Below, one piece after another: positions 6,031-37,653 of a stretch of DNA of 64,000 bases (the stretch's first letter is position 1; every line of letters begins with the position of its first letter). A model generated the notes under the pieces. That model did no database searches. It saw only the letters and a program-made list of their open reading frames with translations, and was not told where the DNA came from. The position numbers and the translations under genes are program-made. Source of the DNA: Antechinus flavipes (Eukaryota); the NCBI RefSeq assembly GCF_016432865.1, contig NC_067399.1, positions 59,334,001-59,398,000 of the forward strand, given 5' to 3'.

Positions 6031-7395
6031 ATGGTTTTACACACTTCCCCATTTCCCTGCTGCTGTCTGTCCCTTCTGCATAGAATTTCTTGGGCTCTGA
6101 TCTTCCCATTTTACTGGCTTATGGACAAATTCGTGGCCTCCTTGATACCGACTACCAATGAGAAGTGCCAAAGGGGCTCCCTGTGCTGGGTCCTCCGCTT
6201 CATCTTCACCGCCCCCATTTACTCGGCCCTCTGCCTTCTCTCAGTCCCCAGTGCCATCTGCGGGTTTCTCCTGTGGAACCCACTGCAGCTATGTAGGCGG
6301 CCGTACATCTACTCCAGGCTGGAGGACAAGGGTCAGGCCGGTGGAAGCATCCTGCTCAACGAATGGAAGGCCACGGGCCCCGGGAAGAGCTTCTGCTTCG
6401 GCACTGCCAACGTCTGTCTCCTCCCTGAATGCATGGCCAGGGTGAACAACCTCTCCAACACGCAAGCCCGCGCCAAAGAAATCGGGCAGAGAATCCGGAA
6501 CGGGGCCAGTCGGCCCCAGATCAAAATCTACATAGACTCCCCAACCAACACTTCTATCAGCGCGGCGAGCTTCAGCAGCCTGGCGTCCCCCCAGGGCGGC
6601 GATGGTCCTAACAAAGCCGTCCCCGCGGGCATCAAGAGAACAACCTCCATGGAGTACAAGGGGGACAACGGCAGCCCCAACAACAGCGAGGAGCACAGGA
6701 ACCCCAAAGCCGGCGGCGACTTCCATGAAGCCGAAGACAACGCCTGCATCATCCGGATCGGGGGAGAGGACGGCGGCCAGCTGTCTGACCCAGAAGCCGA
6801 TGGCACTGGGGACTGCCAGATGGAGACCCCTCCGGAGAACAAAGCCGAGGGCCAGAAGGGCCAGACCCCCAACCACAAGGCAAAGGATGGGGACGCTGGA
6901 AGCTTAGACAGCTACACGGCTTCCCGGGAGTCCCTGGTGAAGGTCCGCATCGGGGACAGCCCCACGGAGCAAGGGTCCGTCAACAACAAGCTGCTCCACA
7001 AGACCTCCATGCTCAAGAAGACCTCCCTGCGCAAAAAGAAGCATACGGACGAGATCTTTGACCATGAGATCTCTGCCTTTTTCCCTGCCAACTTGGACTT
7101 CCTGTGCTTGCAGGAAGTGTTTGACAAAAGGGCGGCTGGGAAGTTGAAAGACCAGCTCCACCAATATTTTGAGTACATTCTGTACGATGTCGGGATCTAC
7201 GGCTGCTGCTGCTCCTGTAAGATCCTGAACAGCTGCTGCCCTTGCAAGAGCCTCAGCAGCTCCTGCCCCTGTAAGATCCTGAACAGCGGCCTCCTTTTTG
7301 CCAGCCGCTACCCAGTCATGGATGCTGTCTATCACTGTTACCCCAACGGAGGAGGGACTGACGCCTTTTCTTCAAAGGGAGCCTTGTTTGTTAAG
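6031..7395 (+). CDS. SMPD3: Neutral sphingomyelinase 2, coding exon 1 (455 codons; N-terminal membrane domain, insertion region, start of catalytic domain)
   Basis: MVLHTSPFP...SWALIFP...RRPYIYSRL...TANVCLLP...RPQIKIYIDSP...DFLCLQEVFD...SGLLFASRYP...SKGALFVK matches nSMase2. Strong Kozak (gcaATGg). Donor AAG|gtaagg at 7396, phase 0. Confidence 0.98.
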
Positions 7396-7643
7396 GTAAG
7401 GATCTCTTCTCCTTGCAGCTTCCCCCTGGCTAGACTGCCCTCGGATAAGGAAGCCCTCCTTTTCCCCCCTTCCTGGGCATCAGCCTGGGGGAGCAGGTTC
7501 TGACCCACCAGCTGACCTAAATCAAGGTACTTCCCCTCCTCTAACAAGAACTCCCAAGGGTCTGTGGCTGTGCTGCAGGTGAGGCTTAGGAGGTTATAGA
7601 CGGTGATCAGGAAATCTCACCCACACGCCCATTGCAAATCTGC

Positions 7644-9935
7644 AAAATGGTGAGCAGGGAGCTGCTCCTGTGCATGAGAACGCTCTTCCTTAGCCAGAAA
7701 TGGTGAGCAGGGAGCTGCTCCTGTGCATGGAGAACGCTCTTCCTTAGCCAGAAATGGTGAGCAGGGAGCTGCTCCTGTGCATGAGAACGCTCTTCCTTAG
7801 CCAGAAATGGTGAGCAGCGAGATGGTCCTGTGCATGGAGAACGCTCTTCCTTAGCCAGAAATGGTGAGCCTGGAGCTGCTCCTGTGCATGAGAACGCTCT
7901 TCCTTAGCCAGAAATGGTGAGCAGCGAGCTGCTCCTGTGCACGGAGAACGCTCTTGGATAGCCAGAAATGGTGAGCAGCGAGCTGCTCCTGTGCAGGAGA
8001 ATGCTCTTCCTTAGCCAGAAATGGTGAGCAGCGAGCTGCTCCTGTGCATGAGAACGCTCTTCCTTAGCCAGAAATGGTGAGCAGCGAGCTGCTCCTGTGC
8101 ATGAGAACGCTCTTCCTTAGCCAGAAATGGTGAGCAGCGAGCTGCTCCTGTGCATGAGAACGCTCTTCCTTAGCCAGAAATGGTGAGCATGGAGCTGCTC
8201 CTGTGCATGAGAACGCTCTTCCTTAGCCAGAAATGGTGAGCAGGGAGCTGCTCCTGTGCATGGAGAACGCTCTTCCTTAGCCAGAAATGGTGAGCAGCGA
8301 GCTGCTCCTGTGCAGGAGAATGCTCTTCCTTAGCCAGAAATGGTGAGCCGCGAGCTGCTCCTGTGCAGGAGAATGCTCTTCCTTAGCCAGAAATGGTGAG
8401 CAGCGAGCTGCTCCTGTGCATGAGAACGCTCTTCCTTAGCCAGAAATGGTGAGCAGAGAGTTGCTCCTGTACATGGAGAACGCTCTTCCTTAGCCAGAAA
8501 TGGTGAGCAGCGAGCTGGCTCCTGTGTACGGAGAACGCTCTTCCTTAGCCAGAAATGGAGAGCAGAGAGTTGCTCCTGTGCATGAGAACGCTCTTGCATA
8601 GCCAGAAATGGTGAGCAGCGAGCTGGCTCCTATGCATGAGAACGCTCTTCCTTAGCCAGAAATGGTGAGCAGCGAGCTGGCTCCTGTGCATGAGAACGCT
8701 CTTCCTTAGCCAGAAATGGTGAGCAGGGAGCTGCTCCTGTGCATGAGAACGCTCTTCCTTAGCCAGAAATGGTGAGCAGCGAGCTGGCTCCTGTGTACGG
8801 AGAACGCTCTTCCTTAGCCAGAAATGGAGAGCAGAGAGTTGCTCCTGTGCATGAGAACGCTCTTGCATAGCCAGAAATGGTGAGCAGCGAGCTGGCTCCT
8901 ATGCATGAGAACGCTCTTCCTTAGCCAGAAATGGTGAGCAGCGAGCTGGCTCCTGTGCATGGAGAACGCTCTTGCATAGCCAGACATGGTGAGCAGGGAG
9001 CTGCTCCTGTGCACTGAGAACGCTCTTCTTAGCCAGAAATGGTGAGCAGCGAGCTGCTCTTGTGCATGAGAACGCTCTTCCTTAGCCAGAAATGGTGAGC
9101 AGCGAGCTGGCTCCTGTGCATGAGAACGCTCTTGCATAGCCAGAAATGGTGAGCAGCGAGCTGCTCCTGTGCATGAGAACGCTCTTCCTTAGCCAGAAAT
9201 GGTGAGCAGCGAGCTGCTCTTGTGCATGGAGAACGCTCTTCCTTAGCCAGAAATGGTGAGCAGCGAGCTGGCTCTGTGCATGAGAACGCTCTTGCATAGC
9301 CAGACATGGTGAGCAGGGAGCTGCTCCTGTGCACTGAGAACGCTCTTCTTAGCCAGAAATGGTGAGCAGCGAGCTGCTCTTGTGCATGAGAACGCTCTTC
9401 CTTAGCCAGAATGGTGAGCAGCGAGCTGGCTCCTGTGCATGAGAACGCTCTTGCATAGCCAGAAATGGTGAGCAGCGAGCTGCTCCTGTGCATGAGAACG
9501 CTCTTCCTTAGCCAGAAATGGTGAGCAGCGAGCTGCTCTTGTGCATGGAGAACGCTCTTCCTTAGCCAGAAATGGTGAGCAGCGAGCTGGCTCCTGTGCA
9601 TGAGAACGCTCTTGCATAGCCAGACATGGTGAGCAGGGAGCTGCTCCTGTGCACTGAGAACGCTCTTCTTAGCCAGAAATGGTGAGCAGCGAGCTGCTCT
9701 TGTGCATGAGAACGCTCTTCCTTAGCCAGAAATGGTGAGCAGGGAGCTGCTCCTGTGCATGAGAACGCTCTTCCTTAGCCAGAAATGGTGAGCAGGGAGC
9801 TGCTCCTGTGCACTGAGAACGCTCTTCCTTAGCCAGAAATGGTGAGCAGGGAGCTGCTCCTGTGCATGAGAACGTTCTTCCTTAGCCAGAAATGGTGAGC
9901 AGTGAGCTGCTCCTGTGCATGGAGAACGCTCTTCT
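7644..9935. repeat. Intronic minisatellite/VNTR, 53-bp unit, ~43 copies
   Basis: Consensus aaatggtgagcagcgagctgctcctgtgcatgagaacgctcttccttagccag. Period 53 verified at 8041/8094. Units vary by substitutions and 1-nt indels. Confidence 0.97.
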
Positions 9936-12360: not shown

Positions 12361-12503
12361 NNNNNNNNNNNNNNNNNNNNNNNNNNNNNNNNNNNNNNNN
12401 NNNNNNNNNNNNNNNNNNNNNNNNNNNNNNNNNNNNNNNNNNNNNNNNNNNNNNNNNNNNNNNNNNNNNNNNNNNNNNNNNNNNNNNNNNNNNNNNNNNN
12501 NNN
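12361..12503. other. Assembly gap (143 N) inside a CT-rich microsatellite
   Basis: Run of N flanked by (CT)n-like sequence. Confidence 0.99.
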
Positions 12504-13354
12504 NTCCATTTCTCTCTGTTTCTCTCTCATGACAACATGGGACAGGTCAATAAGGCAAAAAAAAAAAATGGGGGCTCTTCTTTGGGAGAGCTGACATTCC
12601 CTTTGAATCTGTGTACTCTCTGCTATGAGGTCCTGAGCTTTTCACACAGAGTGTAATGTGGTGAAACCAAATTAATTCCTGTTATAACAAGATCTACTCC
12701 ATCTATTTTTGCCCACCATTTGTCAGCATTTAACAGATTATATTTTGGTCGTGGCTGCCAGAATTACTTTCCCATAAAAGCAGCGTTTCTTATATAAGAA
12801 TGGATAGTGTTCCATTAACTTGCATTTCATTAAAAAAGGAGCTTTCAGGGACTGAAGGCCCAGAGATCGAAGACTTTGTCACTTCACCTCAGCATCACCA
12901 GATCAGAGCACAGTCCATGTCAGTAATAATTTGAAAAGCATTCTGTCCTCTTCCCGCCTGGAACTAATTCTTCATCTCTTTGTACTTTATTTTGGTAACT
13001 TTTATCGAGCAATTGTCTGTGATTCCTATTACTTCACCTCACCTGTGACCTGCCATTTTTATTCAGAAAACATTAAGTAAATATGCCAAGCCTTTGTTAA
13101 ATGCCAGAGATACAAAGACAAAAACAAAACTCTCCCTGTCTTCAAAGAGTTTACAGTTTAAGAATATCTCCATGTCCCTAGAATTCCTTTTCACAGCCAA
13201 CTCCCCTAGAAAATTTAAAATATGATTATTCAGAAACATTTAATTTTCATCTGTTTTTAAGCACTTCATGTTGTATGTGTTTACATTGTGTTACATATGT
13301 ATAATATAAACACACCTAGTTTTAGATAGATATAGATATAGATATACATGTGTG

Positions 13355-22703: not shown

Positions 22704-22779
22704 GTACAAGTGGGATGTACACCTCAGGACCAAAGAATCGTGGGATATATTTCCTGCACCCACTTGCAAGCTGAAGGAG
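22704..22779 (+). CDS. SMPD3: nSMase2 coding exon 2 (76 nt; VQVGCTPQDQRIVGYISCTHLQAEG)
   Basis: ttttttctcag acceptor, G|gtatgg donor. Size matches the recalled human exon. Contains the THL motif. Confidence 0.97.
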
Positions 22780-28811: not shown

Positions 28812-28967
28812 AAGACAGCACCATTCGATGTGAACAACTGAATCAGCTTCAGGATTGGCTGGCTGATTTCCGAAAATCTACCTCCTCCTCCAGCACAGCC
28901 AATCCCGAGGAGCTCGTGGCATTTGATGTGCTTTGCGGAGACTTCAACTTTGACAACAGCTCTTCTG
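28812..28967 (+). CDS. SMPD3: nSMase2 coding exon 3 (156 nt; (E)DSTIRCEQLNQLQDWL...VLCGDFNFDNSSS)
   Basis: ttcccctctag acceptor, G|gtaaga donor, phase 1-1. Catalytic GDFN motif present. Confidence 0.97.
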
Positions 28968-30315: not shown

Positions 30316-30405
30316 ATGACAAGCTGGTACAACAGCACTCCCTGTTTACACACTACAAGGATCCATGCCGTATTGGTCCAGGGGAGGATAAGCCGTGGGC
30401 AATTG
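30316..30405 (+). CDS. SMPD3: nSMase2 coding exon 4 (90 nt; (D)DKLVQQHSLFTHYKDPCRIGPGEDKPWAI)
   Basis: ttctctgttcag acceptor, G|gtaagg donor, phase 1-1. Confidence 0.97.
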
Positions 30406-30916: not shown

Positions 30917-30980
30917 GTACTTTTTTAAAACAAGATCGCCTCCACGACGAGGAGGTGGGCACTCCAGACAATCTGCAAAA
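30917..30980 (+). CDS. SMPD3: nSMase2 coding exon 5 (64 nt; (G)TFLKQDRLHDEEVGTPDNLQ(K))
   Basis: ttggttccag acceptor, AA|gtaagc donor, phase 1-2. TPDNLQK conserved. Confidence 0.95.
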
Positions 30981-36236: not shown

Positions 36237-36390
36237 GGCTCTGGAAAGTGAAGAAGGGAGGAAAGAGTATATTGACTATCCCACCAGCAAGAACCATCCT
36301 ACCAACCAGAAGGTATTGGTGAAGGGCAACGGCAGGAGGATTGACTACATGCTCTATTCTGAGGAGGGGCTCTACCTGGAGTGGAAAGTG
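36237..36390 (+). CDS. SMPD3: nSMase2 coding exon 6 (154 nt; (K)ALESEEGRKEYIDYPTSK...KGNGRRIDYMLYSEEGLYLEWKV)
   Basis: gtctag acceptor, GTG|gtgagt donor, phase 2-0. RRIDY catalytic motif. One codon shorter than the recalled human exon. Confidence 0.96.
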
Positions 36391-36872: not shown

Positions 36873-37052
36873 NNNNNNNNNNNNNNNNNNNNNNNNNNNN
36901 NNNNNNNNNNNNNNNNNNNNNNNNNNNNNNNNNNNNNNNNNNNNNNNNNNNNNNNNNNNNNNNNNNNNNNNNNNNNNNNNNNNNNNNNNNNNNNNNNNNN
37001 NNNNNNNNNNNNNNNNNNNNNNNNNNNNNNNNNNNNNNNNNNNNNNNNNNNN
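36873..37052. other. Assembly gap (180 N)
   Basis: Run of N after a GA-rich tract. Confidence 0.99.
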
Positions 37053-37551: not shown

Positions 37552-37653
37552 GAGGTGGAGGAATTCAGTTTTATTACCCAGTTAGCAGGTCTGACTGACC
37601 ACCTACCTGTGGCCATGCGCCTGATGGTCAACACTGGCGAGGAAGAGGTATAG
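37552..37653 (+). CDS. SMPD3: nSMase2 terminal coding exon (EVEEFSFITQLAGLTDHLPVAMRLMVNTGEEEV-stop)
   Basis: ttttcctgtag acceptor. Catalytic TDH motif. TAG at 37651-37653. Total CDS 2007 nt = 668 aa plus stop. Confidence 0.98.
   Translation, partial: EVEEFSFITQLAGLTDHLPVAMRLMVNTGEEEV

What the first reader, a model, noticed from the sequence alone, without database searches (positions are those of the whole stretch)
7204..7287. In-frame triplication of the catalytic-domain Cys (palmitoylation) motif of nSMase2
Seen: three 27-nt units. 7207-7233 encodes CCSCKILNS, 7234-7260 CCPCKSLSS and 7261-7287 SCPCKILNS. Units 1 and 3 are 25/27 identical and units 1 and 2 are 21/27, so this is a real, partly diverged tandem duplication rather than an exact assembly echo. 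It gives 9 Cys in 28 residues (C392-S419). Known (from memory): human has one copy (YGCQGCCSFKCLNSG, 4 Cys), and its CC pair (mouse C395/C396) is a palmitoylation site needed for plasma-membrane targeting and stability. Catalytic residues (N127, E362, GDFN, RIDY, TDH) are intact. Inference: an 18-aa Cys-rich loop that multiplies S-acylation sites or forms a metallothionein-like CC/CxC metal- or redox-sensing module on an otherwise conserved enzyme. It may vary in copy number between species or individuals.
Basis: partly seen in the sequence, partly recalled or inferred. Interest (0 to 1): 0.75.

Follow-up and report, generated by a model that had tools for sequence, protein, structure and literature searches.

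The report
Triplicated palmitoylation loop in marsupial nSMase2
The yellow-footed antechinus gene for neutral sphingomyelinase 2 carries a real, ancient, expressed three-fold repeat of the short cysteine-rich loop that is fat-modified (palmitoylated) in mouse; it is shared by Australian marsupials, already sits unremarked in database proteins, and its function is untested.

Summary
Positions 7207-7287 hold three in-frame 27-nt units (25/27 and 21/27 identical). No codon shuffle reaches this score.

They lie in coding exon 1 (6031-7395) of SMPD3/nSMase2. The window is Antechinus flavipes. Its seven exons reproduce XP_051830902.1 exactly.

The repeat replaces the 12-residue "palmitoylation loop", which holds mouse C395/C396 and is disordered in human structure 5UVG. 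The antechinus loop has 28 residues and 9 Cys.

It is not an assembly error or a private allele:
- Seven Australasian marsupials have three orthologous units. Wombat has two, Dromiciops four, opossums one.
- Contigs from three DNA runs and one spliced RNA run show no indel.
- A brushtail possum transcript contig also carries three units.

All 9 Cys are invariant. Loop pN/pS is about 0.08-0.17 at normal synonymous divergence, so selection keeps the loop.

The same loop has expanded independently into Cys-rich strings in bats, several afrotherians and a slow loris.

Extra S-acylation sites are the best-supported mechanism but remain inferred. A metallothionein-like role has no support. I found no paper describing the expansion.

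Verdict: a lineage-specific variant of a known motif, of moderate interest.

The parts
6031..7395 (+). Coding exon 1 of SMPD3 (nSMase2), residues 1-455: N-terminal hydrophobic domain, juxtamembrane linker, first part of the catalytic domain with its long disordered insertion, and the Cys loop
   Evidence: ORF from the ATG at 6031. The spliced model reproduces P0122 exactly. The donor AAG|gtaagg at 7395/7396 is confirmed by a spliced RNA contig of run X17.
7204..7287 (+). Expanded 'palmitoylation loop', C392-S419: 28 residues, 9 Cys. It replaces the 12-residue loop of other tetrapods.
7207..7233 (+). Repeat unit 1 (CCSCKILNS)
7234..7260 (+). Repeat unit 2 (CCPCKSLSS), the diverged 'SLSS' type. 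It is orthologous to unit 2 of the other Australasian species and resembles units 2 and 3 of Dromiciops.
7261..7287 (+). Repeat unit 3 (SCPCKILNS). Its first codon is TCC in all four Australasian species whose DNA was obtained. It corresponds to the single unit kept in opossums.
6058..6066 (+). Marsupial-specific CCC at residues 10-12, where other tetrapods have N-S-C/F
   Evidence: Alignment A2
6184..6186 (+). C52, the only Cys left of the first palmitoylation cluster (human C53/C54/C59), beside a 3-residue deletion shared by all marsupials
   Evidence: cluster definition from PMC10550728
22704..22779 (+). SMPD3 coding exon 2
28812..28967 (+). SMPD3 coding exon 3
30316..30405 (+). SMPD3 coding exon 4
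30917..30980 (+). SMPD3 coding exon 5
36237..36390 (+). SMPD3 coding exon 6
37552..37653 (+). SMPD3 last coding exon, including the stop codon

Best explanation
Shown: this is a fixed, ancient, in-frame tandem duplication (9-residue, 27-nt unit) of the palmitoylation loop of neutral sphingomyelinase 2. It arose in the australidelphian stem after the split from opossums. It then drifted in copy number (wombat 2, most species 3, Dromiciops 4), is present in mature mRNA, and is kept by purifying selection that spares every cysteine. Inferred: the duplication arose by slippage or unequal exchange in a TGC/CTG-rich stretch whose unit junctions read CAGC|TGCTGC. The loop is a disordered surface loop next to the DK-switch loop and carries the acylated CC pair in mouse. 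The extra CC/CxC motifs therefore most likely act as additional S-acylation acceptor sites, which would strengthen or prolong anchoring of the catalytic domain to the inner membrane leaflet. In this it would resemble the heavily palmitoylated cysteine strings of other peripheral membrane proteins (a comparison from memory). It may compensate for the marsupial loss of two of the three cysteines of the first palmitoylation cluster.
For: Reality and age:
- The same three orthologous units occur in seven Australasian species from three orders, two in wombat, four in Dromiciops and one in two opossums.
- Contigs of four runs from four organisms span the repeat with no indel.

Expression:
- The RNA-seq contig of X17 runs from the repeat across the exon 1/2 junction; its loose end CAAGTGGG equals 22707-22714.
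- An intronless 2956-nt Logan contig of Trichosurus encodes the full 668-residue protein with three units.

Selection:
- 0 of 9 Cys positions vary against 7 of 19 other positions in the seven three-unit species (Fisher p=0.043).
- Loop pN/pS is 0.08-0.17 in dasyurid-diprotodont pairs, with pS 0.26-0.52 like the flanks.

Position:
- The loop aligns to the human Cys loop of 5UVG.
- Mouse C395/C396 are reported as palmitoylated, and mutants of both clusters mislocalise (PMC10550728 and PMC11237349).
- Residues 393-402 are missing from 5UVG and are called the palmitoylation loop, adjacent to the DK-switch loop (PMC9697135).

Compensation lead:
- Cluster 1 is reduced and shortened in all marsupials, and a new CCC appears at residues 10-12.
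Against: - No acylation, localisation or activity data exist for any marsupial enzyme, so the mechanism is inferred from position alone.
- The wombat has lost a unit, so the exact copy number is not essential.
- Loop pN/pS is no lower than in the disordered insertion (0.12-0.17) or the N-terminal domain.
- The Cys-invariance test is marginal and not corrected for phylogeny.
- Recurrent expansions in other mammals fit a mutational hot spot as well as they fit selection.
- The structure prediction gave no usable model of the loop (mean pLDDT 36).
Confidence: 0.6

Rival explanations
1. Nearly neutral length drift. The loop is a disordered, tolerant surface loop encoded by slippage-prone TGC/CTG-rich DNA. 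Duplications are Cys-rich simply because the template is, and they persist because they do little harm. On this view there is no new function.
For: Independent Cys-rich expansions of 15-26 residues occur at the same loop in pteropodid, vespertilionid, miniopterid and mormoopid bats, aardvark, two sengis, golden mole, manatee and slow loris. Copy number ranges from 2 to 4 within Australidelphia. The loop is unresolved in the human crystal structure. Constraint is similar to that of other disordered parts.
Against: All nine Cys are kept in seven species of three orders while 7 of 19 other positions changed. Synonymous divergence is normal but non-synonymous divergence is low. The frame is never broken. 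A neutral repeat of this age would be expected to lose cysteines.
Confidence: 0.25
2. Metal-binding or redox-sensing module. The CC/CxC array would chelate Zn/Cd or form reversible disulfides, as in metallothionein, and so regulate the enzyme.
For: Cys density is 32% with CC and CxC spacing. Some independent expansions also add His, for example Elephantulus P0028, Chrysochloris P0048 and Dromiciops unit 2. nSMase2 is described as redox-sensitive in a title cited by PMC10550728.
Against: The loop gives no Pfam match of any kind, metallothionein included, even at E up to 10. Cys of the homologous positions are reported as acylated, not metal-bound. The site faces the membrane-proximal, reducing cytosol. 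There is no direct evidence.
Confidence: 0.08
3. Assembly artefact or a private allele of the sequenced individual.
For: None found. The only caveat is that all reads evidence was Logan contigs, and run X2 may be the source individual.
Against: The protein is identical to the RefSeq model. The same architecture is found in eight other species' independent assemblies. Contigs from four runs of four organisms show no indel. Spliced transcripts from two species carry it.
Confidence: 0.01

Closest known systems
Human/mouse nSMase2 (SMPD3) palmitoylation loop: mouse C392, C395, C396, C400; human residues 393-402, unresolved in PDB 5UVG
   Same: Orthologous gene and orthologous loop, between the conserved YDVG-Y-G and GLLFASRYP flanks. 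It is Cys-rich and ends in K-x-L-N-S. The catalytic residues are unchanged.
   Different: 28 residues and 9 Cys instead of 12 residues and 3-4 Cys. It is built of three 9-residue tandem units. The Q/H-G dipeptide after the first Cys is absent in marsupials.
Opossum SMPD3 (Monodelphis P0003, Gracilinanus P0002)
   Same: It shares the marsupial-type loop sequence (three Cys, then S-C-P-C-K-I-L-N-S), the CCC at residues 10-12 and the reduced first cluster.
   Different: It has a single unit (12 residues, 5 Cys). This dates the duplication to after the didelphid split.
Independent loop expansions in bat and afrotherian SMPD3 (for example Pteropus P0008 with 25 residues, Pipistrellus P0064 with 22, Elephantulus P0028 with 26, Orycteropus P0004 with 21)
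   Same: They sit at the same site, keep the frame and raise the count to 8-12 Cys.
   Different: They are not built of the 27-nt unit. They insert irregular runs of C, CxC and H/Q/R before the conserved C-S-F-K motif, so they are separate events.
Cysteine-string / multi-Cys S-acylation motifs of peripheral membrane proteins (CSP-alpha/DNAJC5, SNAP-25 linker). This comparison is recalled from memory and was not tested.
   Same: They are dense clusters of CC and CxC in a short unstructured segment of a cytosolic protein that needs membrane attachment.
   Different: There is no sequence homology. Here the string is an internal loop of an enzyme that also has two hydrophobic membrane segments. 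Acylation of the added Cys is unproven.

Membership tests
SMPD3 / neutral sphingomyelinase 2 ortholog | Exo_endo_phos (DNase I-like) catalytic domain | tested here: met
   PF03372, E 3.3e-07, 30.7 bits against a cut-off of 24.5. 5UVG chain A, E 5e-72.
SMPD3 / neutral sphingomyelinase 2 ortholog | Catalytic and metal-binding residues conserved (N127, E362, GDFN, RIDY, TDH in antechinus numbering) | tested here: met
   N127, E362, G523, D524, N526, R618, D620, Y621, T650, D651 and H652 are invariant or nearly invariant columns of the 40-species alignment A2, whose first row is the antechinus protein.
SMPD3 / neutral sphingomyelinase 2 ortholog | N-terminal domain with two hydrophobic segments and a long insertion splitting the catalytic domain | tested here: met
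   The match to 5UVG (an insertion-deleted construct) falls into two stretches, query 93-150 and 317-435. Helices 11-38 and 51-88 are the only confident parts of the model.
SMPD3 / neutral sphingomyelinase 2 ortholog | Orthology to annotated SMPD3 | tested here: met
   The seven exons in the window reproduce XP_051830902.1 (P0122) residue for residue. The window is collinear with GCA_016432865.2 CM028218.1.
S-acylated (palmitoylated) cysteine cluster | Positional homology to the experimentally acylated Cys (mouse C395/C396) | tested here: met
   The loop aligns between the same flanks as the human/mouse cluster. The site definition comes from PMC10550728 and PMC11237349.
S-acylated (palmitoylated) cysteine cluster | Thioester-linked fatty acid on the added cysteines | not testable with these tools
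   This needs acyl-biotin exchange, acyl-PEG or metabolic labelling.
S-acylated (palmitoylated) cysteine cluster | Flexible, membrane-proximal location | tested here: inconclusive
   The literature says the human loop is unresolved and lies next to the DK-switch loop. My own model was too poor to judge (pLDDT 28-45 in this region).
Metallothionein-like metal-binding module | Match to a metallothionein or other Cys-rich metal-binding family | tested here: not met
   Zero Pfam families at E up to 10 for P0122:385-425 and P0128:385-436.
Metallothionein-like metal-binding module | Metal binding | not testable with these tools
   This needs metal analysis of recombinant protein.
Coding minisatellite (variable tandem repeat within an exon) | Head-to-tail units with a length divisible by three | tested here: met
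   Period 27, 3.1 copies, no indels.
Coding minisatellite (variable tandem repeat within an exon) | Copy-number variation between species | tested here: met
   1, 2, 3 and 4 units in opossums, wombat, seven species and Dromiciops respectively.
Coding minisatellite (variable tandem repeat within an exon) | Copy-number polymorphism within a species | tested here: inconclusive
   No indel appears in contigs of X2, X4, X6 and X17. Contigs drop rare variants, and each organism was sampled only once.

The most novel reading that the evidence does not exclude
The palmitoylation loop of nSMase2 is a recurrent target of adaptive 'valency tuning'. Australidelphian marsupials, bats and several afrotherians independently turned it into a cysteine string. 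In the two largest cases (marsupials and bats) this goes with deletion or erosion of the first, N-terminal palmitoylation cluster. The membrane anchor of the enzyme would then have been moved from the N-terminal linker onto the catalytic domain itself, next to the DK switch, changing how the enzyme is docked and activated.
Probability: 0.2. Interest if true: 0.55.

Novelty: new variant of a known kind. Interest (0 to 1): 0.38.

Why it matters
nSMase2 makes ceramide at the inner membrane leaflet, drives exosome budding, and is a drug target. Its localisation depends on S-acylation of two small Cys clusters.

Nature has produced an allelic series at one of these clusters. There are 1, 2, 3 or 4 units in marsupials, and unrelated Cys strings in bats and afrotherians, all on an otherwise conserved enzyme.

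This gives ready-made constructs for asking how the number of acyl anchors sets membrane residence, stability and activity. It also allows a test of whether the two clusters can substitute for each other.

The finding opens no new category of biology. The sequences are already in public protein databases.

Tried and rejected
- **Structure prediction.** AlphaFold2 on the full-length antechinus protein with a 40-ortholog alignment gave mean pLDDT 36 and pTM 0.31. This is unusable for the loop or for mapping onto 5UVG.
- **Ortholog DNA.** Monodelphis P0003 and Dromiciops isoform X2 were not on record. No opossum DNA could be compared, so the two-codon difference between a 'prefix plus unit' and the observed array is unexplained at the DNA level.
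- **Papers.** Airola 2017 and Shanbhogue 2019 are not held. Information on the loop in 5UVG comes second-hand from PMC9697135.
- **Single-strand DNA fold.** The repeat is not unusually stable (z -1.49), so there is no evidence for a special hairpin.
- **Antisense ORFs.** Those over the exon are ordinary for GC-rich coding sequence and were not pursued.
- **Intronic minisatellite.** The 53-nt repeat shares an 11-mer with unit 1, but it is restricted to dasyurids and absent from the koala and Dromiciops loci. It is therefore unrelated to the old exon duplication.
- **Earlier scan notes.** They held nothing on this locus.
- **Large representative protein search.** I did not run it, because orthology was already settled.

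Full report
**Observation**

Tandem Repeats Finder reports a 27-nt period at 7205-7287 with 3.1 copies, 78% matches, no indels and score 117.

In frame the stretch reads one Cys followed by CCSCKILNS, CCPCKSLSS and SCPCKILNS. That is 9 Cys in 28 residues.

Chance is excluded:
- None of 2000 codon shuffles of the exon reaches the observed lag-27 score (42 of 54 against a shuffle maximum of 33).
- No other place in the window reaches that score.
- The unit consensus with up to 3 mismatches occurs only here.

**Gene and species**

The exon matches the catalytic domain of human nSMase2 (PDB 5UVG, E 5e-72). The match falls into two stretches separated by the long insertion that the crystallised construct lacks. 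The full protein passes the Pfam Exo_endo_phos threshold.

The 435-residue exon translation is 100% identical to Antechinus flavipes SMPD3 (XP_051830902.1, P0122). The window is collinear with that species' chromosome record CM028218.1.

Seven exons reproduce the 668-residue RefSeq protein residue for residue:
- 6031-7395
- 22704-22779
- 28812-28967
- 30316-30405
- 30917-30980
- 36237-36390
- 37552-37653

**What the loop is**

From lungfish to human, the segment between the conserved YDVG-Y-G/S and GLLFASRYP flanks is 12 residues long. It follows the pattern C-x-x-C-C-x-F-K-x-x-N-S. Of 130 orthologs examined, 95 have this length.

The literature places the second palmitoylation cluster of mouse nSMase2 here. 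C395 and C396 are the reported acylated pair, within a Cys stretch at 392, 395, 396 and 400. Mutating both clusters abolishes palmitate-driven plasma-membrane translocation and sends the enzyme to lysosome-like vesicles (PMC10550728 and PMC11237349, both citing Tani & Hannun 2007).

In 5UVG, residues 393-402 are unresolved. They are called the palmitoylation loop and lie next to the loop that carries the DK switch (PMC9697135).

The net gain over the single-copy state is 16 residues, not 18.

**Distribution and age**

The 90%-identity cluster around the best hit holds nine australidelphian species. The loop lengths are as follows:

| Species | Loop length | Units |
|---|---|---|
| Antechinus, Sarcophilus, Macrotis, Phascolarctos, Trichosurus, Petaurus, Notamacropus | 28 residues | 3 |
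| Vombatus | 19 residues | 2 |
| Dromiciops | 37 residues | 4 |
| Monodelphis, Gracilinanus (opossums) | 12 residues | 1 |

At the DNA level the units are orthologous between species rather than homogenised within them:
- The middle 'SLSS' units group together, including Dromiciops units 2 and 3.
- Unit 3 begins with TCC in all four Australasian species for which DNA was obtained.

The triplication therefore predates the crown of Australidelphia and postdates the split from Didelphimorphia. From memory, that is roughly 60-80 million years ago. Later changes were one gain in Dromiciops and one loss in the wombat.

The koala middle unit looks like a chimera of unit 1 and unit 2. This hints at occasional unequal exchange in vombatiforms. 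That is an inference only.

**Reality in reads and RNA**

All runs available were Logan contigs, so rare variants cannot be excluded. Four runs from four organisms cover the region:

| Run | Type | Coverage | Differences | Indels |
|---|---|---|---|---|
| X2 | DNA-like | 6600-7640 in one piece | 2 | none |
| X4 | DNA-like | 6600-7640 in one piece | 9 | none |
| X6 | DNA-like | 6600-7640 in one piece | 14 | none |
| X17 | RNA-seq | 6600-7398 | 18 | none |

X2 is near-identical and may be the source animal.

After 7398 the X17 contig continues with CAAGTGGG. The next exon begins GTACAAGTGGG at 22704. The contig is therefore spliced at 7395/22704 and is mature mRNA.

The three differences of X17 inside unit 2 (7240, 7242, 7252) are exactly the Tasmanian devil's codons. 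Organism E is therefore almost certainly Sarcophilus. That identification is an inference.

An intronless 2956-nt contig from a Trichosurus run encodes the complete 668-residue protein with three units.

Misassembly and non-expression are both excluded.

**Selection**

Across the seven three-unit species, none of the 9 Cys positions varies, whereas 7 of the 19 other positions do (Fisher one-sided p=0.043, not corrected for phylogeny).

Nei-Gojobori counts for dasyurid-diprotodont pairs are as follows:

| Region | pS | pN/pS |
|---|---|---|
| Loop | 0.26-0.52 | 0.08-0.17 |
| Disordered insertion | about 0.40-0.45 | 0.12-0.14 |
| N-terminal domain | about 0.41-0.45 | 0.16-0.18 |
| Catalytic core | 0.37-0.39 | 0.03-0.04 |

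The loop is therefore constrained as a protein, to about the same degree as the other flexible parts. Its cysteines are the most constrained positions in it.

**Recurrence elsewhere**

The same loop has been lengthened independently, and always with added Cys:

| Lineage | Loop length | Cys |
|---|---|---|
| Pteropodid bats | 25 | 10 |
| Pipistrellus | 22 | 10 |
| Miniopterus | 19 | 8 |
| Pteronotus | 18 | 8 |
| Elephantulus | 26 | 12 |
| Aardvark | 21 | 8 |
| Rhynchocyon | 18 | 6 |
| Chrysochloris | 18 | 5 |
| Manatee | 15 | 3 |
| Slow loris | 15 | 5 |

These insertions are irregular and are not the marsupial 27-nt unit.

The list is biased. Only the best 120 of 405 hits to a Cys-rich query were shown.

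**Mechanism**

Three steps are shown:
- The loop is the ortholog of a known S-acylation site.
- It is expressed.
- It is conserved with all cysteines intact.

Three steps are inferred:
- The added CC/CxC motifs are acylated.
- This increases the number of lipid anchors on the catalytic domain.
- That alters membrane residence or docking near the DK switch.

A further lead concerns the first palmitoylation cluster. All marsupials have reduced it to one Cys, with a 3-residue deletion, and have a new CCC at residues 10-12. The bats with expanded loops share a 9-residue deletion at the same linker.

This would fit a relocation of acyl anchors. It rests on only two independent lineages, and afrotherians and the loris expand the loop without losing cluster 1. 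It is therefore a hypothesis only.

The rivals are a neutral slippage hot spot and a metal or redox module. No Pfam family of any kind matches the loop, and the metal reading has no positive evidence.

**Novelty**

The expanded loop is already present in RefSeq models of nine species, including this one. The sequence itself is therefore not new.

Searches of the held literature found no paper on marsupial SMPD3 loop expansion or on ortholog insertions at the palmitoylation site. That library is incomplete.

I class the finding as a lineage-specific variant of a known motif. It is of moderate interest, mainly as a natural series for studying acyl-anchor number.

**Limits**

- The structure prediction failed.
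- No opossum DNA was obtained.
- No raw reads were available.
- Divergence dates and the comparison with cysteine-string proteins are from memory.

Noticed in passing
window 7645-9934: An intronic minisatellite begins 250 nt downstream of the exon: period 53-54 nt, about 43 copies, 92% matches. It is also present, in shorter form (about 0.7 kb), in the Tasmanian devil intron and absent from the koala and Dromiciops loci, so it is dasyurid-specific. It shares an 11-mer (GCTGCTCCTGT) with repeat unit 1, probably by chance.
   Followed up: partly
window 6058-6066 and 6166-6200 (residues 10-12 and 46-57): All marsupial SMPD3 proteins, opossums included, have CCC at residues 10-12 where other tetrapods have N-S-C/F. 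They also keep only one Cys of the first palmitoylation cluster, with a 3-residue deletion. Total Cys rises from 16-19 in sauropsids and monotremes to 24 in opossums and 26-33 in Australidelphia.
   Followed up: partly
proteins P0005-P0014, P0052, P0054, P0058, P0064, P0075, P0079, P0090, P0116 (bat SMPD3): Bat SMPD3 proteins share a 9-residue deletion in the linker that carries the first palmitoylation cluster. Most also have an expanded Cys string in the second loop. Three sequences with the deletion keep a 12-residue loop, two of them with 5 Cys.
   Followed up: partly
window 6992-7039: A second small coding tandem repeat: period 18, 2.7 copies, 83% matches. It encodes the Lys/Thr/Ser-rich stretch just before the catalytic domain resumes.
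   Followed up: no
window 6711: The window has C here, where contigs of all four runs laid (four organisms, including the near-identical X2) have G. This is a private allele or a base error of the assembly. It lies in the disordered insertion.
   Followed up: no
window 12361-12504 and 36873-37052: Two runs of N (assembly gaps or masked stretches) lie inside SMPD3 introns.
   Followed up: no
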